A DNA stretch of 64,000 bases from Octopus bimaculoides (taxonomy: Eukaryota). The number at the start of each line of letters is the position of its first letter. Positions within the stretch are counted from its first letter, which is position 1. The stretch spans positions 90,540,739-90,604,738 of the forward strand of contig NC_068986.1 in NCBI RefSeq assembly GCF_001194135.2. Reading direction: 5' to 3'. The translations under genes and the position numbers were made by a program. The notes beneath the pieces are model-generated. The model saw only the letters and a list, made by a program, of their open reading frames with translations. It was not told where the DNA came from and did not search any database. This document shows, one piece after another, positions 1,067 to 62,639 of the stretch.

Positions 1067-2099
1067 AGATCCTTTTTTTGTTAGACAAATGCACAAAATT
1101 TTTTTTTTCCGTTAATTTTTTTGTTGGAAGTTATGAGGCAACAAACTCGTGGGATGGGGTACTCATCTGCAGTTATGCCACATCTTGCTTCTTAAACTTT
1201 TTTTCCATTACTCAAATATGTTTATTGGGAGAAAATATTAAACAGACAGGGAAGGTATCAAATGGTCGTGAGATGTACTAAAAACAACAGCTAAATCGCC
1301 CTTAACTTTCTTTCCATAGTGAAACCATATTCAACACTGTATTTATGAATTTGTTTCTCTCATCATAATACATGGTATCTTTTTTAAAACGTTTTGCTAC
1401 TGCTCAAATGAAAAATAAATTAATCTTAAAATTTTGTATCAAACTTTTTCAATAACACTCAAGCTAAAAAATAATTTATGAATTTCTTTCTCTTCGAAAG
1501 CCCTCTTCCCACACCCACGGAAAAAAATTTTCCCCACAAATTTCTTTATAATCGTAATCTATGCAATTTTAAAGGTATTTATATAAAATTTCATTGAAAG
1601 ATATCCATTTTCCTAAAAGTTATGAGAGAAAAAGTCGGATCGTGTAAATATCCCGCCGCGGTTCGTTGGCGCAAATTTTTGTTTTCATATTCGTTTAATA
1701 CACGCTTTTCTACACCTATTACACTTTTTTTTGTGTGACTCTGTTTAAAATAATAACCAAAATTTTAACCGTAATCACTTTCATTCAGTTAATTTATTAA
1801 AATATTCCGTATTGTAGATTCTTTCTCCAAAAAAGTTTTGTTAATCATTATTTAATATTCGAAATAAGTCAATCTATTCAGGCGAGACGAGTAAATCGGT
1901 ATCTAAAAAACACAGCTTGGTATCTGAGATATACTGAAACGAAATAAAAGAAAATATTATCGAAAATGCTCCTAAATTAGCAGAATGTGAAAATCTGAGT
2001 TAACGCTATATAATTATTGTTGACATTAGCAGAAAGCAATAGTAGAGAGGATGTTAATGTATGAAACATGTTTGACAATGTTTCTCAAACTTACGATTA

Positions 2100-2136
2100 G
2101 TTTTGTCTCTACATCCGGTCAGCCATATTTCGCTGT
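2100..2136 (+). promoter_or_regulatory. Conserved ETS/YY1-like promoter block, putative promoter of ZNF gene 1
   Basis: 31/37 identical to 18274-18310. Contains ACATCCGG (ETS-like GGA(A/T) core) and GCCATATTT (YY1-like). Confidence 0.55.
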
Positions 2137-2265
2137 TTCTTTGTTGTATTTGTTGGTTTAGATGAGTTTATACTGATTACTATGCCTTTTGTATATAGAG
2201 AGGGTATGTACTACAAAAGAAGACTGTATTCGTGGGATTGAAGAGAAAGTAAACAATATGAAGAG

Positions 2266-2271
2266 GTAAGA
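2266..2271 (+). other. Candidate splice donor of a non-coding first exon (ZNF gene 1)
   Basis: GAG|GTAAGA about 130 bp downstream of the conserved block. An alternative GG|GTATGT lies near 2204. Confidence 0.35.
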
Positions 2272-3920: not shown

Positions 3921-4480
3921 TCAAGGTGTAGCCCCAGCATGCCCACAGTCCACTGACACACACACACACACGCACATATATAGATAGACATATAATCGTT
4001 CATCATGTATGCGTGTGTATGTGTATATATATATATATATATATATNNNNNNNNNNNNNNNNNNNNNNNNNNNNNNNNNNNNNNNNNNNNNNNNNNNNNN
4101 NNNNNNNNNNNNNNNNNNNNNNNNNNNNNNNNNNNNNNNNNNNNNNNNNNNNNNNNNNNNNNNNNNNNNNNNNNNNNNNNNNNNNNNNNNNNNNNNNNNN
4201 NNNNNNNNNNNNNNNNNNNNNNNNNNNNNNNNNNNNNNNNNNNNNNNNNNNNNNNNNNNNNNNNNNNNNNNNNNNNNNNNNNNNNNNNNNNNNNNNNNNN
4301 NNNNNNNNNNNNNNNNNNNNNNNNNNNNNNNNNNNNNNNNNNNNNNNNNNNNNNNNNNNNNNNNNNNNNNNNNNNNNNNNNNNNNNNNNNNNNNNNNNNN
4401 NNNNNNNNNNNNNNNNNNNNNNNNNNNNNNNNNNNNNNNNNNNNNNNNNNNNNNNNNNNNNNNNNNNNNNNNNNNNNNNN

Positions 4481-6804: not shown

Positions 6805-8016
6805 CAGGGTGTTTTGGCTAAATTTGACTGTTTGCATAAAAGGTAAAGAAAACACTATATCCTATCCAAAAATAAAAGTATTTAAGAAATATCAAAAAAT
6901 ATCAACTCGATCATGACTGGAAGATAACAGTTTACTCAAAGTAACCATCCTCAGCTTTCACCACTGCCTCGTGATATCTCTGGAACCTAGTGCATGCATT
7001 CCTCTGTCTCTGAGATAATCTTTGAACACCTTGATTTTAGCTACCAGCTCAGCCTTGGTGTTGCAGGCAGAGCAGTTAGTGTTTTTATGAACCATGCTTC
7101 ATAGATAGTAATCCCTAGGATTACTATCAGGGGAATTAGGAGGTCAGGAATTGGGGCTGGTGAAGTTATAGAAATTCTCTGTCAACTACTTCAGACTCTT
7201 TCTGAAAGCATGCCATGGAGCCAAATCCTATAGCCACACATATGGCCTTCTCCAGCCAGATTTTGATCACAGTCTCCATCAACTTCATATAGCTGTCTGA
7301 ATTAAGCCTAAGGCCCTGTTCCAAGATGTGGGGTAATATGATGTCAGCCTCACTGGAGACACACCCAAAGACAATCACAGATTTAGGGAAACTTGGCTTT
7401 CATCATATGTGTGGCACCACTTGAATTGTAAGCAAGGCACCTGTTGTTCTGGATGTTTTGCAACTGGTCCTGGTTGAAGTTCTTTTCATCTGAGAAGAAC
7501 CAGATCATCCCCAGCTCAGCAGGATGCCACAGCTTATTCAAGAGTTTCTTGGCATTGGCTATCAGAATTTGTCCCTTGCACCCCTTATATGTGTGGTAGT
7601 AAAGATCCTTATTCAGTACCAACTTCATGGTGGCGATTCCAACACCCATCTCTCTCACTAAAACCTGGATTCCCTTGTTCAGATCTTCCATCACCTTGTC
7701 CTGCTGTTGTATGAATTCCAATGTTTTGACACAGTCAGAACGCCTGCTATGTCCTGTTCTGCTGGTCATGGCTTTGTAGTCTCCATTGCAGTTGTTCGTG
7801 TCATATCTGCTGCCTTTACAGTGTTCACAGAACATTGAGCAGCAGTCATGATGTTGACAGTGTGAATCATCAGAATACAAGTTTCCCTTTTCCGATATTC
7901 AGATAGCTCCCAACCGTCCATGTCAGCTATCTTTTTTCTCAGCCACAACTTTAGTTTCAAGCTGTTCTTGAAAAAAGGAGACACAAAAAAATGCCAAATT
8001 TAGCTTGAACACCCTG
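6805..8016 (-). mobile_element. Tc1/mariner element, DD37D (maT) type, full-length but decayed
   Basis: TIRs CAGGGTGTT(TTG/CAA)GCTAAATTTG with TA on both sides (6803-6804, 8017-8018). Motifs FSDEKNF, VFGCVSSE and *PPNSPDSNPRDY. Counted 37 residues between D2 and D3. Confidence 0.9.
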
Positions 8017-8053: not shown

Positions 8054-8420
8054 GTGGAGGCCCAGTGGTCAGGGCAGCAGACTCGCGGTCATAGGATTGC
8101 GATTTCGATTCCCAGACCGGGCGTTTTGAGTGTTTATTAAGCGAAAACACCTAAAGCTCCACGAGGCTCTTGCAGGGGATGGTGGCGAACCCTGCTGTAC
8201 TCTTTCTCTCACTCTTACTTCCTGTTTCTGTTGTACCTGTAATTTAAAGGGTCAGCCTTGTCACACTGTGTCACGCTGAATATACCCGAGAACTACGTTA
8301 AGGGTACACATGTCTGTGGAGTGCTCAGCCACTTGCACGTTAATTTCACGAGCAGGCTGTTCCGTTGATCGGATCAGCTGGAACCCTCGACGTCGTAAGC
8401 GACTGAGTGCCAACAACAAC
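8054..8420 (+). mobile_element. tRNA-derived SINE, family C, with 10-bp TSD
   Basis: A-box/B-box-like head and (CAA)n tail. ATTTAAAAGT is duplicated at 8044-8053 and 8421-8430. A second copy lies at 17762-18129. Confidence 0.9.
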
Positions 8421-8682
8421 ATTTAAAAGTAAGGCATAATAAATTATATTTAAGTTGAACATCTAAAACAGATATATCTATCCAAAACTTCTGTTTCACT
8501 AATTGGTTAATAGAACTGACATAGTTCTTTTATAGTCTTTTAACTGCCAAGTCAGTATTTTAAAATTTCTTCCTAAGTGAAATCTACCTTTTAAGTGAGC
8601 ATTGCAAATATAATTCATCATTATGTCTCACAGATACATAAATATAATGCCACTTTCAATCTTGTATCATATGAAGTTACAT

Positions 8683-8709
8683 GCTAATAATGGTTTTCTT
8701 TAATTTCAG
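8683..8709 (+). other. Branch point and splice acceptor of the ZNF gene 1 coding exon
   Basis: CTAAT followed by TTTTCTTTAATTTCAG|, about 290 bp upstream of the ATG. Confidence 0.55.
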
Positions 8710-8999
8710 AACATTTGTGTCAGACTGTGGAGTTCTACCTGATAATGCCATCATTCAGTTGTGTTTGCTGAAATAACCAGTGTGTGGTGTTTATTAAAGT
8801 TGTCTGAGGATAGTGCGATGTAAGACAAACATATCTACAGTGAACAGTTATAATATATCTGATATTAGTGTGAAGTTAATGTTACATCAAATGCAAATTA
8901 GTTAATGGAAATGAACAGTTGACCAATGAAACATTTTTTTGTATGTTCTACATCACTTGAATAGAGACATCATTGTTATAAAGTTCTATTAATCTGACA

Positions 9000-10613
9000 A
9001 TGTTTGAACCGGAAGAGAAACCATATAGATGCGATGTTTGCGGGGAGCTGTTTTCTATAAAGAGTAACTTTGATGCTCATAAGTGCACTCAAAAAGGTAA
9101 AAAAGTGTACCATTGTGAATATTGCAGGAAAGTCTTTTATCGAAAGTGTACATTAACAGATCACACACGTATTCACACAGGAGAGAAACCCTATGGCTGT
9201 GAAATCTGTGGGAAAGCATTTTCTTTTAGTAGTAATTTGTCCCGTCATATACGCATTCACACTGGAGAAAAACCACACAACTGTGATATCTGCGGAAAGG
9301 CATTTTCTTGTAACAGTGCGTTATCATATCACAAACGCATTCACACAGGAGAACTACCACACCACTGTCAAATCTGTGGAAAAGGATTTTCTTTTGTTAG
9401 TAAATTAGCTATTCATGTGCGTATTCACACTGGAGAGAAACCTTATAATTGTGAAATTTGTGGTAAAGCTTTTTCTTGTAATAATAAATTAACATATCAC
9501 AAACGTATTCACACAGGGGAAAAACCCTACCACTGTGAAATTTGTGGAAAAGCATTTATTTTTAATAATCATTTAGCTTATCATAAACGAACTCACACTG
9601 GAGAAAAACCATACCAATGCAAAATTTGTGGAAAGGCATTTTCTTGTGGTAGTTATTTAAAAGATCATAAACGTATACACACAGGAGAAAAACCATATGA
9701 TTGTGACATTTGTGGGAAAGCATTTTCAAGTAGTACACAGTTATCCAGTCATAAGCATAGGCACAGTGGAAGAACACCGTATCACTGTGGATTTTGTGGG
9801 AAAACATTTCCTCTGCAGAGTCAATTATCACTTCATAAAATTATTCACACAGGGAGTGAACCATATTCATGCGAAATTTGTGGAAAAACATTTTCTTTGA
9901 AGAGTAGATTAACTTTCCATAAAGTCGTTCACACAGTAGAAAGGCAAGGTGATAGTGGAATTTGTAGAAAAGAGTTTTTACAAAAGGTTCAGTTGAAAGA
10001 TCAGAGGTTTAATCGCATTGAAAGAGTTTACCGTTGTGAAATATGTGACAAAGTATTTTCTCATAGCAGCAACTTAGCGGCCCATAGACGCCTTCATACA
10101 GGAGAAAATCTTTACCATTGTGAAATATGTGGGAAAAAATTTTCCTGTAACAGTAAACTAACAGATCATAAATGGAGTCACACGGGGGAAAAGCCATACC
10201 ATTGTGAAATATGTGAGAAATCTTTTTCTCGAAAGTCAAATCTGTCTCGCCATAAACGCACTCATACTGGTGAAAAACCATATCAGTGTGAATTTTGTGA
10301 AAAAGCATTTCATAGAAAATGTCACTTATCAGAACATACGCGTATTCACACAGGAGAAAAACCATACCAATGTGAAATTTGTGACAAAACATTTTACAGA
10401 AAGGATCACTTGGCAGAGCATACACGTATTCACACAGGAGAAAAGCCTTACCAATGTGAAATTTGTGACAAAGCTTTTTCTAGTAGTAGTCACTTGTCAT
10501 ACCATATACGCATTCACACTGGAGAAAAACCATACCAGTGTGAAATTTGTGGTGAAGCATTTTCTAGGAATAGAAATTTAATACGTCATAAACAAATTCA
10601 TACAAGAAAATAA
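9000..10613 (+). CDS. Tandem C2H2 (Kruppel-type) zinc-finger protein, 537 aa, 19 repeat units (17 canonical), no effector domain visible
   Basis: Uninterrupted ORF of Y/H-x-C-x2-C-GKAF-x5-L-x2-H-x3-H units with TGEKP linkers. Unit 1 lacks the second His, and unit 12 lacks one Cys and both His. Confidence 0.95.
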   Translation: MFEPEEKPYRCDVCGELFSIKSNFDAHKCTQKGKKVYHCEYCRKVFYRKCTLTDHTRIHTGEKPYGCEICGKAFSFSSNLSRHIRIHTGEKPHNCDICGKAFSCNSALSYHKRIHTGELPHHCQICGKGFSFVSKLAIHVRIHTGEKPYNCEICGKAFSCNNKLTYHKRIHTGEKPYHCEICGKAFIFNNHLAYHKRTHTGEKPYQCKICGKAFSCGSYLKDHKRIHTGEKPYDCDICGKAFSSSTQLSSHKHRHSGRTPYHCGFCGKTFPLQSQLSLHKIIHTGSEPYSCEICGKTFSLKSRLTFHKVVHTVERQGDSGICRKEFLQKVQLKDQRFNRIERVYRCEICDKVFSHSSNLAAHRRLHTGENLYHCEICGKKFSCNSKLTDHKWSHTGEKPYHCEICEKSFSRKSNLSRHKRTHTGEKPYQCEFCEKAFHRKCHLSEHTRIHTGEKPYQCEICDKTFYRKDHLAEHTRIHTGEKPYQCEICDKAFSSSSHLSYHIRIHTGEKPYQCEICGEAFSRNRNLIRHKQIHTRK

Positions 10614-11555: not shown

Positions 11556-12308
11556 GGCGCAGGAGTGGCTGTGTGGNNNNNNNNNNNNNNNNNNNNNNNN
11601 NNNNNNNNNNNNNNNNNNNNNNNNNNNNNNNNNNNNNNNNNNNNNNNNNNNNNNNNNNNNNNNNNNNNNNNNNNNNNNNNNNNNNNNNNNNNNNNNNNNN
11701 NNNNNNNNNNNNNNNNNNNNNNNNNNNNNNNNNNNNNNNNNNNNNNNNNNNNNNNNNNNNNNNNNNNNNNNNNNNNNNNNNNNNNNNNNNNNNNNNNNNN
11801 NNNNNNNNNNNNNNNNNNNNNNNNNNNNNNNNNNNNNNNNNNNNNNNNNNNNNNNNNNNNNNNNNNNNNNNNNNNNNNNNNNNNNNNNNNNNNNNNNNNN
11901 NNNNNNNNNNNNNNNNNNNNNNNNNNNNNNNNNNNNNNNNNNNNNNNNNNNNNNNNNNNNNNNNNNNNNNNNNNNNNNNNNNNNNNNNNNNNNNNNNNNN
12001 NNNNNNNNNNNNNNNNNNNNNNNNNNNNNNNNNNNNNNNNNNNNNNNNNNNNNNNNNNNNNNNNNNNNNNNNNNNNNNNNNNNNNNNNNNNNNNNNNNNN
12101 NNNNNNNNNNNNNNNNNNNNNNNNNNNNNNNNNNNNNNNNNNNNNNNNNNNNNNNNNNNNNNNNNNNAGGGGTATCCAGCTGTAGAAACTCTGCCAAATC
12201 AGACTGGAGCCTGGTGTAGCCATCTGGTTCACCAGTCCTCAGTCAAATCGTCCAACCCATGCTAGCATGGAAAGCAGACGTTAAATGATGATGATGATGA
12301 TGATGATG

Positions 12309-17620: not shown

Positions 17621-17761
17621 GATAATCACTTAAAAAATTTTTAAAAAGACCCACCAAATTGAACACAAGATTGGGCAGAATNNNNNNNNNNGTTGTTCTT
17701 TATTTTCAGAGTTCAAACCTCCTCGAGGTCAACTTTGTTGTTTATCTTTTCAAGGTCGACA

Positions 17762-18129
17762 GGCTGGCACTCCGTCGGTTATGACGACGAGGGTTCCAGT
17801 TGATCCGATCAACGGAACAGCCTGCTCGTGAAATTAACGTGCAAGTGGCTGAGCATTCCACAGACACGTGTACCCTTAACGTAGTTCTCGGGGATATTCA
17901 GCGTGACACAGTGTGACAAGGCTGACCCTTCGAATTACAGGCACAACAGAAACAGGAAGTAAGAATGAGAGAAAGTTGTGGTGGAAGAATACAGTAGGGT
18001 TCGCCACCATCCCCTGCCGGAGCCTCGTGGAGCTTCAGGTGTTTTCGCTCAATAAACACTCAAAACGCCCGGTCTGGGAATCGAAACCACGAGTCCGCTG
18101 CCCTAACCATTGGTCCATTGTGCCTCCAC
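17762..18129 (-). mobile_element. SINE C inserted into a family-D SINE, 12-bp TSD
   Basis: Reverse complement of 8054-8420. TCAAGGTCGACA is duplicated at 17750-17761 and 18130-18141. Confidence 0.9.
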
Positions 18130-18273
18130 TCAAGGTCGACAAAATAAGTACCAACCAACAACCGGCATTGGTTTAAGATTCTTATATAACATCTCAGATG
18201 TGAAAACGTAAATAGAATGGTAAGGGATGACTAACCGAGTATTTATGTCAGCTGTGTTAGCGTTTATCAATTC

Positions 18274-18310
18274 GTTTTGGCTGTACTTCCGGTCAGCCAT
18301 AACACGCTGT
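18274..18310 (+). promoter_or_regulatory. Conserved ETS/YY1-like promoter block, putative promoter of ZNF gene 2
   Basis: 31/37 identical to 2100-2136. Contains ACTTCCGG (canonical ETS) followed by TCAGCCAT. Confidence 0.55.
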
Positions 18311-18388
18311 CTTCACAAGATTGAGGGAACGTGAAGTGGACTCTAGTGATTATTTACAATTTAGAAACAGTTCGGTAGGATCTAAAAG

Positions 18389-18394
18389 GTATGT
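18389..18394 (+). other. Candidate splice donor of a non-coding first exon (ZNF gene 2)
   Basis: AAAG|GTATGT about 80 bp downstream of the conserved block. Confidence 0.45.
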
Positions 18395-18689
18395 GTTGCT
18401 CTTGGGTTATGATGAATTATAAAGAAGAAGAAAGTGAGAAGCTTGAAGCAAGTTAAGCTCTGTTGTCGACTGTTGCTGTGAATTGATGCTGGATGTTGTT
18501 GACTCGCTCCAGGTCAGTTCTGATCGAATAGATCGAAGATCGAAGGCGTGACAATAATTGTTCTCTGTATAAGTTTGTTTTGAAGGTAATTTAGCTGCCT
18601 TTTCTAGCTGGTCGAAAAGCCACATAGAGGCTCCTCCGTTAGCTGGTAGCTTGCACATGTTAATTACTGTTGCCTGTTTGAATCCTGTG

Positions 18690-20590: not shown

Positions 20591-20616
20591 CTGACAATAG
20601 TTTTGTTGTATTTCAG
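20591..20616 (+). other. Branch point and splice acceptor of the ZNF gene 2 coding exon
   Basis: CTGAC followed by TTTTGTTGTATTTCAG|, about 190 bp upstream of the ATG. Confidence 0.55.
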
Positions 20617-20808
20617 GAAATTTTCCTGTAATGAAAAGCTGATTTCAAAGAAAGATGTTCTCTGTTTATATACTGTGAGAGAAAAAAAAAATTAAATTTA
20701 AATGTTGAAAATGAAAAATGGAGCTTCCTTGAGACCAATTTCTCTTCCTTGGCATAGCAATAAGAAAAGATGAATATATTATATCATTGTGATTGCTGAT
20801 GTGAATCC

Positions 20809-21543
20809 ATGAGAAAATATATCAAGATAATGGAGGACATGATTGATACACGGGAGAGACCTTTTCACTGTGATATTTGTGATAAAAGATTTTTACGGAT
20901 AACTCATTTGACTGAACATATAAGGACTCACACGGGAGCAAAACCATACAGCTGTGAGGTTTGTGGGAAAGGGTTTTTATATATTTCACACTTAACTGAA
21001 CATATTCGAACTCACACAGGAGATAAATCATTCTCTTGTGAAATTTGTGGGAAAGCATTTGCAAGGAAAGATTGTCTACGTAATCATAAGGCAACTCACT
21101 CCAATGAGAAACCACACCACTGTGAAATTTGTGGTAAAGCATTCACAAAGAAATATTACCTACGTAACCATCAAGCAATCCACAGTGTAGAAAAGACCCA
21201 CTATTGTGAAATCTGTGGTAAAGCATTCACATGTAGAGGCTACCTTTCAAAACATAAACTGGTTCACACAGGACAGAGACCTTATAAATGTGACACATGT
21301 GGTAAAGAATTCTTACAAAATGCTAATTTAAAAACCCATAAATTAACTCATACAGGTGTAAAACCCTATCCCTGTGAAACCTGTACTAAAACGTTTTCAT
21401 CAAAAAGTGACTTAAAAAAGCATGAATTGGTTCATACAGGAGAGAAACCATTCCACTGTGAAATCTGTGGAAAAGCATTTTCAATTAAAAGTAATCTGAA
21501 GAAACATAAATTTATTCATATTAAAGAGACTTTGGCTCAGTAA
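20809..21543 (+). CDS. Tandem C2H2 zinc-finger protein, 244 aa, 8 fingers, no effector domain visible
   Basis: Eight canonical C-x2-C-x12-H-x3-H units with TGEKP-like linkers. The start could be any of three Mets. Confidence 0.93.
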   Translation: MRKYIKIMEDMIDTRERPFHCDICDKRFLRITHLTEHIRTHTGAKPYSCEVCGKGFLYISHLTEHIRTHTGDKSFSCEICGKAFARKDCLRNHKATHSNEKPHHCEICGKAFTKKYYLRNHQAIHSVEKTHYCEICGKAFTCRGYLSKHKLVHTGQRPYKCDTCGKEFLQNANLKTHKLTHTGVKPYPCETCTKTFSSKSDLKKHELVHTGEKPFHCEICGKAFSIKSNLKKHKFIHIKETLAQ

Positions 21544-36603: not shown

Positions 36604-37519
36604 NNNNNNNNNNNNNNNNNNNNNNNNNNNNNNNNNNNNNNNNNNNNNNNNNNNNNNNNNNNNNNNNNNNNNNNNNNNNNNNNNNNNNNNNNNNNNNNNN
36701 NNNNNNNNNNNNNNNNNNNNNNNNNNNNNNNNNNNNNNNNNNNNNNNNNNNNNNNNNNNNNNNNNNNNNNNNNNNNNNNNNNNNNNNNNNNNNNNNNNNN
36801 NNNNNNNNNNNNNNNNNNNNNNNNNNNNNNNNNNNNNNNNNNNNNNNNNNNNNNNNNNNNNNNNNNNNNNNNNNNNNNNNNNNNNNNNNNNNNNNNNNNN
36901 NNNNNNNNNNNNNNNNNNNNNNNNNNNNNNNNNNNNNNNNNNNNNNNNNNNNNNNNNNNNNNNNNNNNNNNNNNNNNNNNNNNNNNNNNNNNNNNNNNNN
37001 NNNNNNNNNNNNNNNNNNNNNNNNNNNNNNNNNNNNNNNNNNNNNNNNNNNNNNNNNNNNNNNNNNNNNNNNNNNNNNNNNNNNNNNNNNNNNNNNNNNN
37101 NNNNNNNNNNNNNNNNNNNNNNNNNNNNNNNNNNNNNNNNNNNNNNNNNNNNNNNNNNNNNNNNNNNNNNNNNNNNNNNNNNNNNNNNNNNNNNNNNNNN
37201 NNNNNNNNNNNNNNNNNNNNNNNNNNNNNNNNNNNNNNNNNNNNNNNNNNNNNNNNNNNNNNNNNNNNNNNNNNNNNNNNNNNNNNNNNNNNNNNNNNNN
37301 NNNNNNNNNNNNNNNNNNNNNNNNNNNNNNNNNNNNNNNNNNNNNNNNNNNNNNNNNNNNNNNNNNNNNNNNNNNNNNNNNNNNNNNNNNNNNNTATATA
37401 TATATATATATATATATATTAACCATAAGGACTCACTTTTACATGTATATAAATATTCAATCCTGAATATTTGCTGGTGATTGTGTGTGTGTGTGTGTGT
37501 GTGTAAAAATAGGAATAGA

Positions 37520-44994: not shown

Positions 44995-46254
44995 TATAAA
45001 TTGCGGAACATAAAAAGATGGATGCAAATACATACACAGCACACTCAGATGTACACGTATATATGTATGTGTGTATACATACATACGTACATACATACAT
45101 ACATACATACATACATACATACATACATACACACACACAAACGCACATAGATATATACGTGTTGTATGTATGTATGTGTGTGTGTGTGTGTGTGTGTGTA
45201 TTACCTCCCNNNNNNNNNNNNNNNNNNNNNNNNNNNNNNNNNNNNNNNNNNNNNNNNNNNNNNNNNNNNNNNNNNNNNNNNNNNNNNNNNNNNNNNNNNN
45301 NNNNNNNNNNNNNNNNNNNNNNNNNNNNNNNNNNNNNNNNNNNNNNNNNNNNNNNNNNNNNNNNNNNNNNNNNNNNNNNNNNNNNNNNNNNNNNNNNNNN
45401 NNNNNNNNNNNNNNNNNNNNNNNNNNNNNNNNNNNNNNNNNNNNNNNNNNNNNNNNNNNNNNNNNNNNNNNNNNNNNNNNNNNNNNNNNNNNNNNNNNNN
45501 NNNNNNNNNNNNNNNNNNNNNNNNNNNNNNNNNNNNNNNNNNNNNNNNNNNNNNNNNNNNNNNNNNNNNNNNNNNNNNNNNNNNNNNNNNNNNNNNNNNN
45601 NNNNNNNNNNNNNNNNNNNNNNNNNNNNNNNNNNNNNNNNNNNNNNNNNNNNNNNNNNNNNNNNNNNNNNNNNNNNNNNNNNNNNNNNNNNNNNNNNNNN
45701 NNNNNNNNNNNNNNNNNNNNNNNNNNNNNNNNNNNNNNNNNNNNNNNNNNNNNNNNNNNNNNNNNNNNNNNNNNNNNNNNNNNNNNNNNNNNNNNNNNNN
45801 NNNNNNNNNNNNNNNNNNNNNNNNNNNNNNNNNNNNNNNNNNNNNNNNNNNNNNNNNNNNNNNNNNNNNNNNNNNNNNNNNNNNNNNNNNNNNNNNNNNN
45901 NNNNNNNNNNNNNNNNNNNNNNNNNNNNNNNNNNNNNNNNNNNNNNNNNNNNNNNNNNNNNNNNNNNNNNNNNNNNNNNNNNNNNNNNNNNNNNNNNNNN
46001 NNNNNNNNNNNNNNNNNNNNNNNNNNNNNNNNNNNNNNNNNNNNNNNNNNNNNNNNNNNNNNNNNNNNNNNNNNNNNNNNNNNNNNNNNNNNNNNNNNNN
46101 NNNNNNNNNNNNNNNNNNNNNNNNNNNNNNNNNNNNNNNNNNNNNNNNNNNNNNNNNNNNNNNNNNNNNNTGATAGAATAAGTACTAGGCTTAAAAAATA
46201 AGTTCTGAAGTCGATTTGTTCCACTAAAACCCTTCAAAGCAGTGGCCCAGCAGA

Positions 46255-47844: not shown

Positions 47845-50800
47845 ATATATATACATACATATACATATATATATATATATATACATATAATTCCTCAACA
47901 TTAATTCCTCAACATTTTGATAGTAATAAAATGACCTGATACTACTATGACCAGTGAAACCTCTAGATTCTAATACTTTTATAGCCTTGTCCATGCATAC
48001 TGCTTACACCTTCCCTCTCTTTAGAAGTAATTGTCCCTCTGCTATCACCACTAGATAAGAAACAATAGAATTCTGAGACAGTTAAAACTTTTGTCTAGAA
48101 TCAATTACTAGCCTGATAGACTCCGCTATGTCAAGATGGACTTATATATTCTTCCTCACATTTGGATTTTATGTATGCTCTCTCCCACTTGGATTTAATA
48201 TGTTGCCACATTTATAATATGTCTTTTTTTCTGCATTTTCGTGCAGCTGAAGATTGCTCTTCATATTGCATTTAAGGTAATGCTCACATTACTTAAATAA
48301 ATTGAAGTAGCATGAAACGTGCGTACTGCAATCACTTTTGAAATCCGTGTTGCTTATTATTTGATTTTAATCACCCATCCTTTTGGGATGCGATATTCGG
48401 GTGCCTTCGCATAAGTACCATATTCAAGCCTTGAATCTATATACATATATATATATAGTTTAAGGATAAATACATGCTTATATTGAATTTTCTACGCACG
48501 TTTCCCCATTAAAATAGTTTGGAGTGCTGCGATATACGTACACATATATGTACATATAAATGTCCATCCATAATGAGGGCGCTATTCAGCACCAGCATTG
48601 CTAGTAATAAGAGTCAAAGCAATTAAAAATGTAGAATGTTCAAGTACCTAATTAAGAAGTAACCCCCCCCCCNNNNNNNNNNNNAAAGCATACAAGATCG
48701 CGATGTAATGAATGTGATTTAGTTATGTTATTCCAGATGCGATTTAACATGAAATGAAAATAAAAAGTCGATATAGCTCACAGAATGGATCCTTAGAACT
48801 TTTCTGTCAAGGGATCCCGATACCACCGCTACTCCCTTCTCCACGTTTGCCAAGTCTCACCTTAAATATTGCTGTCCACCATAATCTCCGTACACAAAAT
48901 TAAACGTTGAGAATCGAAGTACTCCAGAGATCAATGCTAATAAATAAATGAATAAATATCATGATAGGTTCTCGTTATTGGAATCACCTGAGAAAGCTCT
49001 ATTTTCTCCAACACCAACATGAAAGCCACATGAATGGGGAAAATATTTCATTAACGCTGTCCAAACGATACTGGCATGTAGCTCAGAAGTCATCCAAAGC
49101 TAGGCTCCCGTGCCATATGCTCTACAAAAATCTAGATCATATCACTTAACATTTCAACAACTTTTTTTTTAAATCTCAACTGGTTCCGCATTTTTCAACT
49201 GTGTCTCGAAATAGATAAAACACTCAATAACATTCAAGTAATATCTGAATAAATTCCTCCAAAATAATACCAGGAAAATCACAGACAGCCAGTTGCATTT
49301 CGAGATGGCTATGGCGTCCCAAAACATGACTTAGAAGATTCCTTCAGATGGCACTATTAATGTTAGACACGGCCTGGGCCAAGACTCAAGTCATAATCAC
49401 CAATATAGCTAAAAATCTAGAATGTTCAAGTACCTAATTAAGAAGTAAAAATGCGAGATAATACCTTTGGTAATTCTCTTAAACATCTATAGTTTTATAT
49501 CTATATGCGATATATATCTAGTGCATGTGACATCCATGGATTATTCTCTAAAATTCCAGCCTTGAGAAGAGAAAGGAAGAGAGAAAGAGAGGGAAAGTGG
49601 GAAAGAGAGAAACGAAAAATTATCATACCACAAGAAAAAAATGTCAAGATGAGCCAGGTATCTATTTAGTATTGTAATTCTCTTAAGTTACTAGATACCT
49701 ACGTGAACTTAAATTTTACAACATATTTTAAACAAATTTTACAAAAATATTCAAGTTTCTTACCTTCTAATCTTGAAGATGATATCTACGTTTAGAAATA
49801 CAGAATGATATAAGTAATTTTCAAATATCCTTGGAATGGTGGTGTTGAAGACACCAGCTGTTATCATACAGATTTTATTGAAAGTCATTGTTGTAACTTA
49901 ACGTGTGCTGTTGATTTATCATGTGAACCATGACATGTTATTGGGAAATATTACAAAATGTTTAGAAATGCGTTTCTTTTCTCATTTTCTTTATTGATCT
50001 GGTCTAGAATAAGGGGGACTTTCATAGATCTCTCGAAACCGATGAAATCGAGGTGATTAATATTCCTCTTAATGGCAACAGAAAAAGAATAGGCAAGAAG
50101 GTACCAGACGGCCTTATTTTCTGAGGAGGAAGAACAATGTTTTAGCGGTTAGTGAGTAGCCTTTGAAAATAAATATGGTCGACAAAAGGAAGAGAGATAA
50201 GAGAGTGAGTTTGGAGTGGCAGAGTGGAGGTGGCACGAGGCAATTCCTACATGGGACAGGGACCCCAGAGTTAGTTTTTTACTCACTAGACTCCTCAATC
50301 TCTCTCTATTTCTACTACTCTCTACAGGAATCTAGTTTGATCTTTGGAAACAGAGTATTCCATTCCCCCAAAAAGAAGCCACTCTAAATCTGTCAATCTT
50401 CCTCCTATTACACTCATTTCGAATATCTATTAGGTAATGGAGCCATTAACAACAACGTCTTCAAACGCTTTGGATCTAGTACTCTTTCGTTCTCTCCTCA
50501 CTCACTCCTTAACGATCATCATGGTTTTTATAAAGCCAGATTCACAAGTGATCTGTTCTTCTGTGTCAAACTCCTGTGGGTTCTTACATTAAAGCAATAT
50601 TGTTACCCTTGACACCAACAAAATTTTCAATGCATCTGGCATTTAGTCCAATTGCTTGTTAGTATGATAAGTAGATTGATAGACTAGAAGAAGAATTGTC
50701 ATAGAAATAAAATCCATTCTATTATAGGGGAAAGACCCAAAGAATTTATGGTAATTTTCGAACCTTCGTATGACAGAATGCCGAAGTCCATTTTGAAGTT

Positions 50801-55250: not shown

Positions 55251-55285
<35 letters not shown>

Positions 55286-55960
55286 TCACCTTCCTTCTGG
55301 ATTATTCGTGGGTCAAAGGGGCATGCAACATCAACTATATAGCATATGTGGTGCACCTTGGCCACCACTACTAGGTCCGGTCTGTTATGCTCTAGCACCT
55401 GATCTGTTTGGACTGGGAAATCCCAGAGGATTTTGCTAGTCTCCGACTCTGCCATTCCCTGTGGTTTGTGTTCATACCACGTCTTGCCTCTCTCTAGCCC
55501 CCACTTTTCGCACAGTTTCCAATGTAACATTTTCGCTACCTGGACGTGTCGCCACAACTTGTATTGGTTTTGGGAAAGTCTAGGGCATTTGTTCGTGATA
55601 TGGGCAATGGTTTCATCCACTCTGTTACAGATGCGGCACAGCGGAGACACTTGCTCATTCCTCAGGTTGACCCACCACTTCGTGGCCAGAGCTTGGTCCT
55701 GCGCTGCCAGTATAGTGCTCTCGGTCTCTTTTTTTAGGGTTCCTTTCACCAGCCAACCCTACCTATTTTTTCCAGCAACTTCTGTTGGCTGTGCCTACAT
55801 GGAATTGATTGCGTAGTGCCTTCTGGCGAAATTTTTCTTCATGCCCTCTTTGTACTTCTTCCTTTGTTTTCCCTTTTTTCTCTGCTTTCAATACTCCCTC
55901 GTTCCTAACTATCACTAGCAAGGTTTCCTTACTTTGGGCTAGGTATCTCATTAAGCTCTC
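54955..55960 (-). mobile_element. R4/Dong-like non-LTR retrotransposon, 3' portion (CCHC knuckle + restriction-like endonuclease)
   Basis: ETESTILAAQDQAL, CRIC...ETIAHI..C, ILWDF..QTD....HNRPDLVVV, IVDVACP, KEGEKIDR and VPIIVGSL..LLGTARIIRKV, followed by a 3' UTR and a simple-repeat tail. Confidence 0.88.
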
Positions 55961-59940: not shown

Positions 59941-60354
59941 TGTTATTTTTGTTCGTAAAGTTGAATAATGTCTTGTATAGTGTCTTTGCACTTGGCTAGA
60001 GTAAAGGTGTTACATATTTGGGCTTTGTTAAATTTTAATCGTAACAAAACTTTTAATTCCTCCAATTTCTCACGGATTTGGAATATCATGGACTGTATCA
60101 ACCAACTGTAGCGTCTAAAGCCATTGAATATTGCACACATAGAAGCATATGATGCATTTTAGTTGTTACACTTCGTATTATTTCATAATATATTAGCTAA
60201 TATTTAAACTTTGTACGCAGATTAACATCAAGTTATTGTGTATCTCGAAACAGGTTGTGCTATAAGAATTAATGTAAGAATTTCCATTGTTGGATTTTAT
60301 TTAAACAAATACTCACTTTAAAAGTAAAAAATAGCTTTAGAATGAGTTGATATA

Positions 60355-61608
60355 TCAGGTCACCCCATAAGTTCTGTCCGATTTTACCTTTTTTAAAATT
60401 GAATGAAATTTAATAGTATTTTAGAATGTCTAATGGAATTAAAAATTATTTTTATGCATTTGTGTACATTTAAACAAATTATATATTATTTTACAGAATA
60501 ATAGAATCAAAATTTCTTTGATTAAAACCCTTTCTAACATGGAAGTATCCAAAGAGCATTTGAGGNNNNNNNNNNNNNNNNNNNNNNNNNNNNNNNNNNN
60601 NNNNNNNNNNNNNNNNNNNNNNNNNNNNNNNNNNNNNNNNNNNNNNNNNNNNNNNNNNNNNNNNNNNNNNNNNNNNNNNNNNNNNNNNNNNNNNNNNNNN
60701 NNNNNNNNNNNNNNNNNNNNNNNNNNNNNNNNNNNNNNNNNNNNNNNNNNNNNNNNNNNNNNNNNNNNNNNNNNNNNNNNNNNNNNNNNNNNNNNNNNNN
60801 NNNNNNNNNNNNNNNNNNNNNNNNNNNNNNNNNNNNNNNNNNNNNNNNNNNNNNNNNNNNNNNNNNNNNNNNNNNNNNNNNNNNNNNNNNNNNNNNNNNN
60901 NNNNNNNNNNNNNNNNNNNNNNNNNNNNNNNNNNNNNNNNNNNNNNNNNNNNNNNNNNNNNNNNNNNNNNNNNNNNNNNNNNNNNNNNNNNNNNNNNNNN
61001 NNNNNNNNNNNNNNNNNNNNNNNNNNNNNNNNNNNNNNNNNNNNNNNNNNNNNNNNNNNNNNNNNNNNNNNNNNNNNNNNNNNNNNNNNTGCAAAGGAGT
61101 AATTCACTTTGAATTGTTACCACCTAATGCAACAATCAATGCTCAAATCTACTGTCAGCAATTAGAGCGTTTGAACCAAGCTTTGAAGAAAAAATGACCC
61201 GCTTTAGTGAATCGAAAAGGAGTGATGTTTCATCAGGACAATGCGTGATCCCACACTACAAAGATCACATCACAGAAGATCGAGGAGTTTGGTTGGGAAA
61301 AAATTCCTCATCCACCTTATTCTCCCGATCTTGCTCCTTCAGACTACCATTTGTTTCGTAGTTTACAGAATAATTTGGGGGACATAACTTTCGCAAGCCA
61401 GGAGGAGGTCGAAACTTACATTTCAGAGTTCTTCGCTGTGAAACCAAAAGAGTTTTACATTGATAGAATTAAAAAGCTTGTAAATAGACGGAAGGAAGTC
61501 ATAGATAATCAGGGAAAGTACATTGATGATTAAATTTCAGTTAAATATAACATTTGATCACTTGTTTTCTTTATTCAAAATTCGGACAGAACTTATAGGA
61601 TGACTTGA
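60355..61608 (+). mobile_element. Mariner element, DD34D, gapped and decayed
   Basis: 26-bp TIRs TCA(G/A)GTCA(C/T)C(C/T)ATAAGTTCTGTCCG with TA on both sides. Motifs FHQDNA and HPPYSPDLAPSDYHLF. Counted 34 residues between D2 and D3. Confidence 0.93.
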
Positions 61609-62639
61609 TAGGATTTCCAACGAATAAAGTCATAACATGCAACTAGAGTTTTTTTCAATTCTTGCAGTTTGTTTTTCAAATTCTTACTAATTTGGAATAA
61701 GCGCTGGTTAAAAGTTAATTACAAAATACTTGAATATTTTGTTATTCTTTCTGTTTTCGTCCCCTGATGCCATTGTTAATTCAATAAAAGATCTAATGTT
61801 TGAGAACCAATTGTTTATATTTCAATATTTGGTCTGTGAATTCTGATGGATTTGCATTGAGTTTCTTCTCATTTCTTTTACCTCTCCCCTTTGTATTTTA
61901 AGTATATTATTATTTTATACGCTTTTTCCATTACGCTCACCACTATCTATACACTGGGTACTGAAATATAGGGGTTGATATTTATTATGTTTATTAGATA
62001 AATTGGTTTGCATTATAAATCAATAACTGCAAAGATATTGTAAATATGCACAAAGATATTGTAAGTATGCATGATATCAATTATGAAATTGTACTAACAG
62101 CTGGTGTCTGCAAGCGCAACTTTCTTCAGTCTTATTAAATTTTTACTTATATCAGACTGTTTTTTCTGAACATAAGGGTCATCTTTATGCTCATAAGGTA
62201 AGTGAATGTTTGGAAAGTTATATTTAATGATTTAATAGAATTGTATATTTATCTTAACGTTTCGGATAGCTATGATAATGTTTTAGTTTTTCTTTTTCCT
62301 GGATTCTGATTTCATTTAGAATATAATATTTAGACGTTACATATTTATGAATAAACATAACCGCTAAAAAACGAACCGGTGTGTTAAGAACATAATGAGC
62401 TGGCATTTTTCTTAAATGTTATAAAATTTTCAATAAATTTAACGAAAGAAACATAGTGTACTCGCAGACTTGATAAATATAATATAAAACATATCCGAAA
62501 AATGATAAACCAACGCTTTAATAATAAACCAACGTTGTAATGATAAACCAACGTTTTAATCTCTTACTCTCTACAGTATACTCTTGCTCTCTACAGTACT
62601 TTCGGTAGGATATTTCAGTGTGCCCCCTTTCAAAGTAAG

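What the first reader, a model, noticed from the sequence alone, without database searches (positions are those of the whole stretch)
2100..2136. Same 37-bp ETS+YY1-like block upstream of both zinc-finger genes: a candidate shared promoter for the ZNF cluster
Seen: GTTTTGTCTCTACATCCGGTCAGCCATATTTCGCTGT (2100-2136) and GTTTTGGCTGTACTTCCGGTCAGCCATAACACGCTGT (18274-18310) match at 31/37, in the same orientation. They lie 6.9 kb and 2.5 kb upstream of the two ATGs. Each is followed within about 130 bp by a good GT donor, and each coding exon has a branch point and AG acceptor. I could not align the flanks by eye, and the block matches none of the window's repeat families. Established: ACTTCCGG/ACATCCGG is the ETS core and GCCAT-N-TT is the YY1 core; octopus genomes carry a large clustered C2H2 expansion (Albertin et al. 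2015). Inference: the duplicating unit of the ZNF expansion includes a conserved core promoter and a non-coding first exon, which could co-regulate many genes.
Basis: partly seen in the sequence, partly recalled or inferred. Interest (0 to 1): 0.72.

Follow-up and report, generated by a model that had tools for sequence, protein, structure and literature searches.

The report
Conserved ETS-site block upstream of two ZNF genes
Two old, diverged octopus zinc-finger genes keep the same ~40-bp non-coding block at what looks like the start of a non-coding first exon, most likely a retained promoter-proximal element with an ETS site; this is an ordinary kind of feature, and the claim that it serves the whole gene cluster could not be tested.

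Summary
2100-2136 and 18274-18310 match at 31/37 on the same strand. BLAST extends this to 41 bp at 83% (E=3e-5 between the two upstream regions, 0.002 window-wide). The flanks share nothing, and the block belongs to no repeat family in the window. The window is Octopus bimaculoides chromosome CM046606.1. It holds exactly two C2H2 genes, both on the + strand, each with one copy of the block upstream.

The genes are old paralogs: about 50% aa identity, 61% nt identity, saturated dS. The block is therefore conserved as well as the best-kept linker codons. Each copy contains the only ACCGGAWGT (ETS consensus) site in the 64 kb. Each is followed within 135 bp by a strong sense-strand donor (joint chance about 0.004). 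The proposed acceptors align in register, and stops sit just upstream of both ATGs.

The YY1 reading fails: GCCATnTT is present in copy 1 only.

Best reading: a selectively retained promoter-proximal or TSS element with a non-coding exon 1. It is not proven, because no transcript data were available. The cluster-wide and co-regulation claims rest on n=2 and were untestable, since octopus DNA outside the window was masked. This is an ordinary kind of element, of modest interest.

The parts
2096..2136 (+). Block copy 1 (ATTAGTTTTGTCTCTACATCCGGTCAGCCATATTTCGCTGT), 6.9 kb upstream of the ZNF1 ATG
18270..18310 (+). Block copy 2 (ATTCGTTTTGGCTGTACTTCCGGTCAGCCATAACACGCTGT), 2.5 kb upstream of the ZNF2 ATG
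2111..2119 (-). ETS consensus ACCGGATGT inside copy 1. It is one of only two ACCGGAWGT sites in the window.
18285..18293 (-). ETS consensus ACCGGAAGT inside copy 2
2122..2129 (+). GCCATATT, a YY1-like GCCATnTT, in copy 1 only. The equivalent in copy 2 (18296-18303) is GCCATAAC and fails the consensus.
2007..2013 (+). TATATAA 93 bp upstream of block 1. It is a possible TATA box, but the statistical support is weak.
18183..18189 (+). TATATAA 91 bp upstream of block 2
2263..2271 (+). Candidate exon-1 donor GAG|GTAAGA (G of GT at 2266). It scores 10.3 with a rough PWM, a score reached about once per 5.3 kb.
18386..18394 (+). Candidate exon-1 donor AAG|GTATGT (G of GT at 18389), score 8.9. An alternative is CAG|GTCAGT at 18513, score 9.7.
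8684..8709 (+). Candidate branch point, T-rich tract and AG acceptor; exon 2 of ZNF1 would start at 8710
20591..20616 (+). Candidate branch point, T-rich tract and AG acceptor; exon 2 of ZNF2 would start at 20617. It aligns in register with 8710.
9000..10613 (+). ZNF1 coding sequence, 537 aa with 17 C2H2 fingers and no other domain. It is a called gene in GCA_001194135.2.
20809..21543 (+). ZNF2 coding sequence, 244 aa with 8 C2H2 fingers and no other domain. It is a called gene in GCA_001194135.2.

Best explanation
The block is a cis-regulatory DNA element inherited from the common ancestor of two old, tandemly arranged C2H2 zinc-finger paralogs. Selection has kept it while all surrounding non-coding sequence diverged beyond recognition.

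It most likely lies at or next to the transcription start of a short non-coding first exon, roughly 2121-2265 for ZNF1 and 18295-18388 for ZNF2. That exon would be spliced over a repeat-filled intron (6.4 kb and 2.2 kb) to a second exon that carries the rest of the 5' UTR and the whole coding sequence.

The likely working part is the invariant 14-mer TCCGGTCAGCCATA. An ETS-family activator would bind ACCGGAWGT on the antisense strand. The adjoining GGTCAGCCATA would serve as an initiator-like TCAGCC or as the site of a second factor.

Shown: the conservation, the ETS consensus, the splice-signal geometry, and the non-coding status of anything upstream. Inferred: that transcription starts here, that an ETS protein binds, and that other ZNF genes carry the block.
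For: - The match is far beyond chance and is not part of any repeat.
- There are exactly two C2H2 genes in the window, both on the + strand, each with one sense-oriented copy upstream and no copy elsewhere.
- The genes are old paralogs: 46-53% aa identity, about 61% nt identity, third-position identity 44-49%, dS 1.6-3.2. The best finger unit reaches only 72.6% nt identity.
- The block's 34/41 is matched by only 116 of 1.09 million 41-nt windows between the two coding sequences. This points to constraint rather than recent copying.
- The only two ACCGGAWGT sites in 64 kb are in the blocks.
- A strong donor follows both blocks within 135 bp. The chance is 0.062 each and 0.004 jointly, and there is no comparable antisense donor.
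- The acceptors at 8710 and 20617 align in register, 65% over 74 bp, E=0.016.
- In-frame stops lie 21 and 12 nt before the ATGs.
- The assembly's called genes equal the single-exon ORFs.
- Both CpGs in the block are conserved, in a window whose CpG o/e is 0.59.
Against: - There is no transcript, CAGE or chromatin evidence of any kind.
- There are only two copies, so it cannot be said which positions matter.
- There is no CpG island or GC rise at the blocks.
- The donor and acceptor scores come from rough PWMs written from memory. The acceptors rank only in the top 6-8% of AG sites.
- A TATATAA at -93/-91 would put the TSS about 60 bp upstream, with the block inside the 5' UTR.
- dS from zinc-finger arrays is unreliable because the fingers align in many registers.
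- The genome-wide copy number of the block is unknown.
Confidence: 0.55

Rival explanations
1. The block is transcribed 5' UTR sequence. A TATA box about 92 bp upstream sets the TSS near 2040 and 18215, and the block acts as a downstream promoter-proximal site or as an RNA element in the leader.
For: TATATAA lies at -93 and -91 from the two blocks. Only 19 TATATAA occur on the + strand of the window. It is the only co-linear shared 7-mer in the 300 bp upstream.
Against: Some shared co-linear 7-mer turns up in 16% of random anchor pairs, and this one was noticed after the fact. There is no conserved RNA fold: z-scores are 0.16 and -0.72, the two copies fold differently, and the 6-bp stem of copy 2 is absent in copy 1. 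Rfam gives no hit at the blocks.
Confidence: 0.15
2. The block is a conserved regulatory site that is not the promoter, such as an enhancer, silencer or insulator module, or a docking site for a zinc-finger protein. The true first exons lie elsewhere.
For: The conservation itself. The distance to the coding sequence differs nearly three-fold (6.9 vs 2.5 kb). There are no CpG-island features.
Against: Strong sense-strand donors close to both copies and register-aligned acceptors fit a first exon. The variable distance is explained by repeats and gaps inside the intervening sequence.
Confidence: 0.12
3. The two copies are fragments of an old or low-copy interspersed repeat that inserted independently, or a short gene-conversion patch, with no function.
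For: The homology has sharp edges and 83% identity. About 24% of the window is covered by repeats found within the window. Genome-wide copy number could not be checked.
Against: There are only two copies in 64 kb. Both are in the same orientation, and both lie upstream of the only two ZNF genes. Homology is only 41 bp, with no further similarity, and the core has no inverted copy elsewhere in the window. Gene conversion needs flanking homology, and there is none.
Confidence: 0.12
4. Chance similarity, helped by independent convergence on an ETS site.
For: A 14-nt exact match alone between 6.9 kb and 2.5 kb of sequence is not very improbable (my estimate: 0.07-0.2).
Against: 31/37, with matches on both sides of the core, gives E=3e-5 locally and 0.002 window-wide. 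No shuffle gave two core matches. Position and orientation relative to the only two ZNF genes lower the odds by about a further 100-fold (my estimate).
Confidence: 0.04

Closest known systems
TATA-less core promoters driven by ETS sites (GABP/ELK class, CCGGAAGT) placed at or just upstream of the TSS, described mainly in vertebrates (own knowledge: FitzGerald et al. 2004; Xie et al. 2005)
   Same: Both copies have a perfect class-I ETS consensus (ACCGGAAGT / ACCGGATGT) next to an initiator-like TCAGCC, with a short first exon downstream.
   Different: There is no CpG island. The organism is a mollusc, for which I found no promoter-motif survey. Binding and the TSS were not tested.
YY1 promoter-proximal sites (GCCATnTT / AAnATGGCG)
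   Same: A GCCAT core is present in both copies, and copy 1 matches GCCATnTT.
   Different: Copy 2 lacks the TT (GCCATAAC). The three differing bases fall exactly in the YY1 flank. The orientation is opposite to the usual sense AAGATGGCGGC of human +10 to +25 sites (own knowledge).
Conserved sequence element (CSE) in the promoter of each clustered protocadherin variable exon (own knowledge: Wu et al. 2001; Tasic et al. 2002)
   Same: A short conserved block sits just upstream of each member of a tandem gene family, while the surrounding promoter sequence is diverged.
   Different: The CSE is documented for nearly every family member and has a known binder (CTCF) and a role in promoter choice. 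Here only two genes were seen, and no binder or function is known.
Serum response element (ETS ternary-complex-factor site plus CArG box CC(A/T)6GG)
   Same: Copy 1 reads ACATCCGG-TCAG-CCATATTTCG, which is an ETS site beside a 9/10 CArG-like sequence.
   Different: Copy 2 reads CCATAACACG and is not a CArG box. The resemblance is therefore not conserved.

Membership tests
ETS-binding site (class I) | Sequence ACCGGA(A/T)GT with a GGA core | tested here: met
   2111-2119 is ACCGGATGT and 18285-18293 is ACCGGAAGT, both on the minus strand. These are the only two such sites in 64 kb.
ETS-binding site (class I) | Occupancy by an ETS-domain protein | not testable with these tools
   Needs EMSA, ChIP or DAP-seq with octopus ETS proteins.
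YY1 site | GCCATnTT (AAnATGGC) consensus present in the conserved element | tested here: not met
   Copy 1 is GCCATATT and copy 2 is GCCATAAC. The pattern is found at 2122 but not at 18296.
Core promoter / first exon | Mapped transcription start at the element | not testable with these tools
   No transcript contigs carry these proteins. No CAGE or RNA-seq data were available.
Core promoter / first exon | A splice donor shortly downstream, a matching acceptor before the coding sequence, and no coding continuity required | tested here: met
   Donors at 2266 and 18389 (joint P about 0.004). Acceptors at 8710 and 20617 align in register. In-frame stops lie upstream of both ATGs. The signals are predicted, not observed.
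Interspersed repeat / transposon fragment | Many copies, homology running to element ends, terminal repeats or target duplications | tested here: not met
   Within the window there are 2 copies, 41 bp of homology only, and no inverted copy of the core. Genome-wide copy number could not be tested.
Family-wide promoter element (protocadherin-CSE-like) | Present upstream of most members of the gene family and rare elsewhere | tested here: inconclusive
   2 of 2 genes in the window carry it and there are 0 copies elsewhere in the window. No other octopus locus could be fetched.
Structured RNA element | A conserved, stable fold or a match to a known RNA family | tested here: not met
   Fold z-scores are 0.16 and -0.72 on the sense strand and the two folds differ. 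Rfam gives no hit at the blocks.

The most novel reading that the evidence does not exclude
The block is the signature of a family-wide promoter module, carried with a non-coding leader exon by a large share of the roughly 1,800 octopus C2H2 genes. It would be analogous to the protocadherin CSE, giving the expansion a common transcriptional handle, for example ETS-dependent neural or embryonic expression, or promoter choice within clusters. The fact that two paralogs as diverged as any random ZNF pair both keep it hints that it predates much of the expansion.
Probability: 0.12. Interest if true: 0.6.

Novelty: new member of a known kind. Interest (0 to 1): 0.3.

Why it matters
If confirmed, this gives a concrete candidate core-promoter element with an ETS site for octopus C2H2 genes. 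I found no promoter analysis of these genes in the literature I searched. It would also show that the duplicated unit included the promoter and a leader exon, which argues for DNA-level tandem duplication rather than retroposition. A genome-wide PWM scan would then quickly say whether the expansion shares one promoter type. As it stands, it is a paralog footprint at two genes. That is useful for annotation (5' exon and TSS prediction) but not surprising.

Tried and rejected
1. Fetching other octopus ZNF loci.
- The one protein search that ran (ZNF2) returned only generic ZNFs from other animals.
- Three further attempts errored.
- Neither protein is in the cluster collection.
- Two ENA hits were looked up. 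One is a bacterial contig and the other an unidentified AT-rich eukaryote, and neither has the block.
- Sequence outside the window is masked to N in the fetched locus.

2. Pattern scans of public collections gave 0, 1 and 1 hits. The two hits are chance matches in contigs that look prokaryotic (one is a bacterial MAG), with no similarity beyond the pattern.

3. Flank alignment by local alignment with shuffles found nothing above chance.

4. Coding potential of the block, from my own reading of the sequences, was rejected. Two sense frames are open, but nearly all substitutions are non-synonymous. The minus-strand ATG frame stops after 5 codons in copy 1. Stops also precede both ATGs.

5. RNA structure and Rfam were rejected.

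6. tRNA- or SINE-promoter origin was rejected. No tRNA was found in 1-22000. The neighbouring ~370-bp repeat ends 158 bp before block 2 and is not adjacent to block 1.

7. A CpG island is absent.

8. The YY1 and SRE/CArG readings hold for copy 1 only.

9. The TATATAA at -93/-91 is kept as a lead, not a finding.

Full report
**Observation.** The quoted sequences are at the quoted coordinates, both on the + strand, and match at 31/37. BLAST with short words extends the match by four bases to 2096-2136 vs 18270-18310, 41 bp at 82.9%. E is 3e-5 when the two upstream regions are compared and 0.002 when the whole window is compared with itself. The core TTCCGGTCAGCCATA, allowing up to 2 mismatches, occurs only at these two places on either strand. 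The expectation is 0.06, and no shuffle out of 100 gave two matches. Local alignment of the 300 bp on either side is no better than shuffles. The block overlaps none of the window's repeats, which cover 24% of it. Among isolated short matches of similar score, only three in the window are not microsatellite, and this is one of them.

**Context.** Both ZNF proteins are called genes on Octopus bimaculoides GCA_001194135.2, chromosome CM046606.1. The window corresponds to about 90,540,739-90,604,738. A six-frame scan finds C2H2 fingers in only two places. One is 9000-10613 (537 aa, 17 fingers) and the other is 20809-21543 (244 aa, 8 fingers), both on the + strand. Pfam sees nothing but C2H2 arrays in either protein. 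So each of the only two ZNF genes has one sense-oriented copy of the block upstream, at 6900 and 2535 bp, and there is no third copy.

**Age of the paralogs and meaning of the conservation.**
- The proteins are 46-53% identical, and the coding DNA is about 61% identical.
- Third codon positions are 44-49% identical, and dS is 1.6-3.2, which is saturated.
- The arrays align in many registers with similar scores, so dS is rough.
- No register shows recent duplication. The best single finger unit is 72.6% identical and the mean is 61%.
- Only 116 of 1.09 million 41-nt windows between the two coding sequences reach the block's 34/41.
- Apart from the block, the only non-coding similarity between the two genes is a weak match at the proposed acceptors.

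A non-coding 41-mer kept at the level of the most constrained coding windows, in otherwise randomised surroundings, points to purifying selection on a functional element. The alternative is a more recent transfer of a very short segment.

**Anatomy of the block.** The identical positions are GTTTTG-CT-TAC-TCCGGTCAGCCATA---CGCTGT, including an unbroken 14-mer.
- On the antisense strand the 14-mer and its flank read ACCGGATGT (2111-2119) and ACCGGAAGT (18285-18293). From my own knowledge, these are the two canonical forms of the class-I ETS consensus. They are the only two ACCGGAWGT sites in the 64 kb on either strand.
GCCATnTT is present in copy 1 (GCCATATT), but copy 2 reads GCCATAAC. The three adjacent mismatches fall exactly on the YY1 flank.
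- The same applies to a CArG/SRE reading: CCATATTTCG in copy 1 against CCATAACACG in copy 2.
- What is conserved next to the ETS site is GGTCAGCCATA. It contains an initiator-like TCAGCC. This is a resemblance only.
- Both CpGs in the block are conserved, in a window whose CpG o/e is 0.59. There is no CpG island or GC rise.

**Gene model.**
- With a rough donor PWM written from memory, GAG|GTAAGA at 2266 scores 10.3, a score reached about once per 5.3 kb. AAG|GTATGT at 18389 scores 8.9, and CAG|GTCAGT at 18513 scores 9.7.
- A donor of at least 8.9 lies within 135 bp downstream of a random site with probability 0.062, so about 0.004 for both blocks. The antisense side has none above 5.5.
- The proposed acceptors (exon starts 8710 and 20617) have branch-point-like CTAAT/CTGAC and T-rich tracts.
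- The acceptors rank only in the top 6-8% of AG sites with my crude score.
- The acceptors align with each other in exact register, 65% over 74 bp, E=0.016.
- In-frame stops lie 21 and 12 nt upstream of the two ATGs, so the whole coding sequence is in the last exon and any upstream exon is non-coding.
- The assembly's called genes coincide with these single-exon ORFs.
- The sequence between block and acceptor is filled with interspersed repeats and assembly gaps. This explains the different distances.

None of it is transcript evidence.

**Alternatives tested.**
- *RNA element.* The folds differ between the copies and are no more stable than shuffles (z = 0.16 and -0.72). The 6-bp stem of copy 2 is absent in copy 1. 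Rfam gives nothing at the blocks.
- *Coding.* By my reading of the sequences, substitutions in the open frames are almost all non-synonymous, and the minus-strand ATG frame is stopped in copy 1.
- *Repeat fragment.* The window gives no support: two copies, 41 bp of homology, and no inverted copy of the core elsewhere in the window. Genome-wide copy number could not be measured.
- *TATA box.* TATATAA lies at -93 and -91 from the blocks, out of 19 such 7-mers on the + strand. However, some co-linear shared 7-mer appears in 16% of random anchor pairs. I keep this as a lead that would place the TSS about 60 bp upstream and the block in the 5' UTR.

**What could not be done.** The cluster-wide claim needs other octopus ZNF loci, and I could not obtain any.
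- The one successful protein search returned only generic ZNFs from other animals.
- The proteins are not in the cluster collection.
- Sequence outside the window is masked in the fetched locus.
- Pattern scans of metagenome and prokaryote collections gave only two hits, both chance matches with no similarity beyond the pattern.

**Literature.** I found no description of a shared promoter or motif for cephalopod C2H2 genes. The most relevant study reports that paralogs from the same expansion often sit in different co-expression modules (PMC12513265). A shared core promoter would therefore not by itself mean co-regulation. The chromosome-scale paper confirms the large clustered C2H2 expansion in O. 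bimaculoides (PMC9068888).

**Verdict.** The block is real, non-random and most likely functional. The best-supported reading, at about 0.55, is a selectively retained promoter-proximal or TSS element with a conserved ETS site, heading a non-coding first exon of each gene. The 'YY1' label should be dropped. 'Shared promoter for the ZNF cluster' is an extrapolation from two genes. The fact that two such diverged paralogs both keep the block makes a wider distribution plausible but unproven, at about 0.12 for a truly family-wide module. This is a known kind of feature, a paralog footprint at a promoter, in a gene family of current interest. I rate the interest as modest.

Noticed in passing
L005:4212-10669 (ENA ERZ25073768 contig_64): A contig that looks bacterial (Rnf operon, ABC transporter, GST and short-chain dehydrogenase genes) carries three 222-aa C2H2 zinc-finger genes next to a gene with an Anthrax_toxA domain. 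A hit is named 'C2H2-type zinc finger protein [Endozoicomonas sp. GU-1]'. These are eukaryote-like finger arrays in a bacterium, possibly effectors of a marine symbiont.
   Followed up: no
window 8059-8429 (+) and 17746-18116 (-): Two 85%-identical copies of an interspersed repeat of about 370 bp. One lies inside the putative ZNF1 intron. The other ends 158 bp upstream of block 2. ARAGORN finds no tRNA in it.
   Followed up: partly
window 2007-2013 and 18183-18189: TATATAA lies 93 and 91 bp upstream of the two blocks. It is the only co-linear shared 7-mer in the 300 bp upstream. It is suggestive of a TATA box, but the statistics are weak.
   Followed up: partly
window 60353-60385 and 61578-61610: An isolated inverted 33-bp match at 88% flanks an assembly gap (60566-61089). 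These could be the terminal inverted repeats of a small DNA transposon.
   Followed up: no
window 48603-48662 and 49389-49448: An isolated direct 60-bp repeat at 82%, with copies about 790 bp apart.
   Followed up: no
window 55270-55749 (-): A 159-aa ORF with a weak zf-RVT match (E=4e-5, below Pfam's cutoff). It is probably a fragment of a retroelement reverse transcriptase.
   Followed up: partly
window, 13 runs of N (e.g. 4047-4480, 11577-12167, 36604-37394, 45210-46170): Assembly gaps total 4109 N. At least three of them are bordered by TA/TG/CA microsatellites. Two lie between block 1 and the start of ZNF2, so intron and intergenic lengths are approximate.
   Followed up: no
L001:1-1001: The 1 kb of chromosome fetched beyond the window start is returned as N only.
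   Followed up: yes
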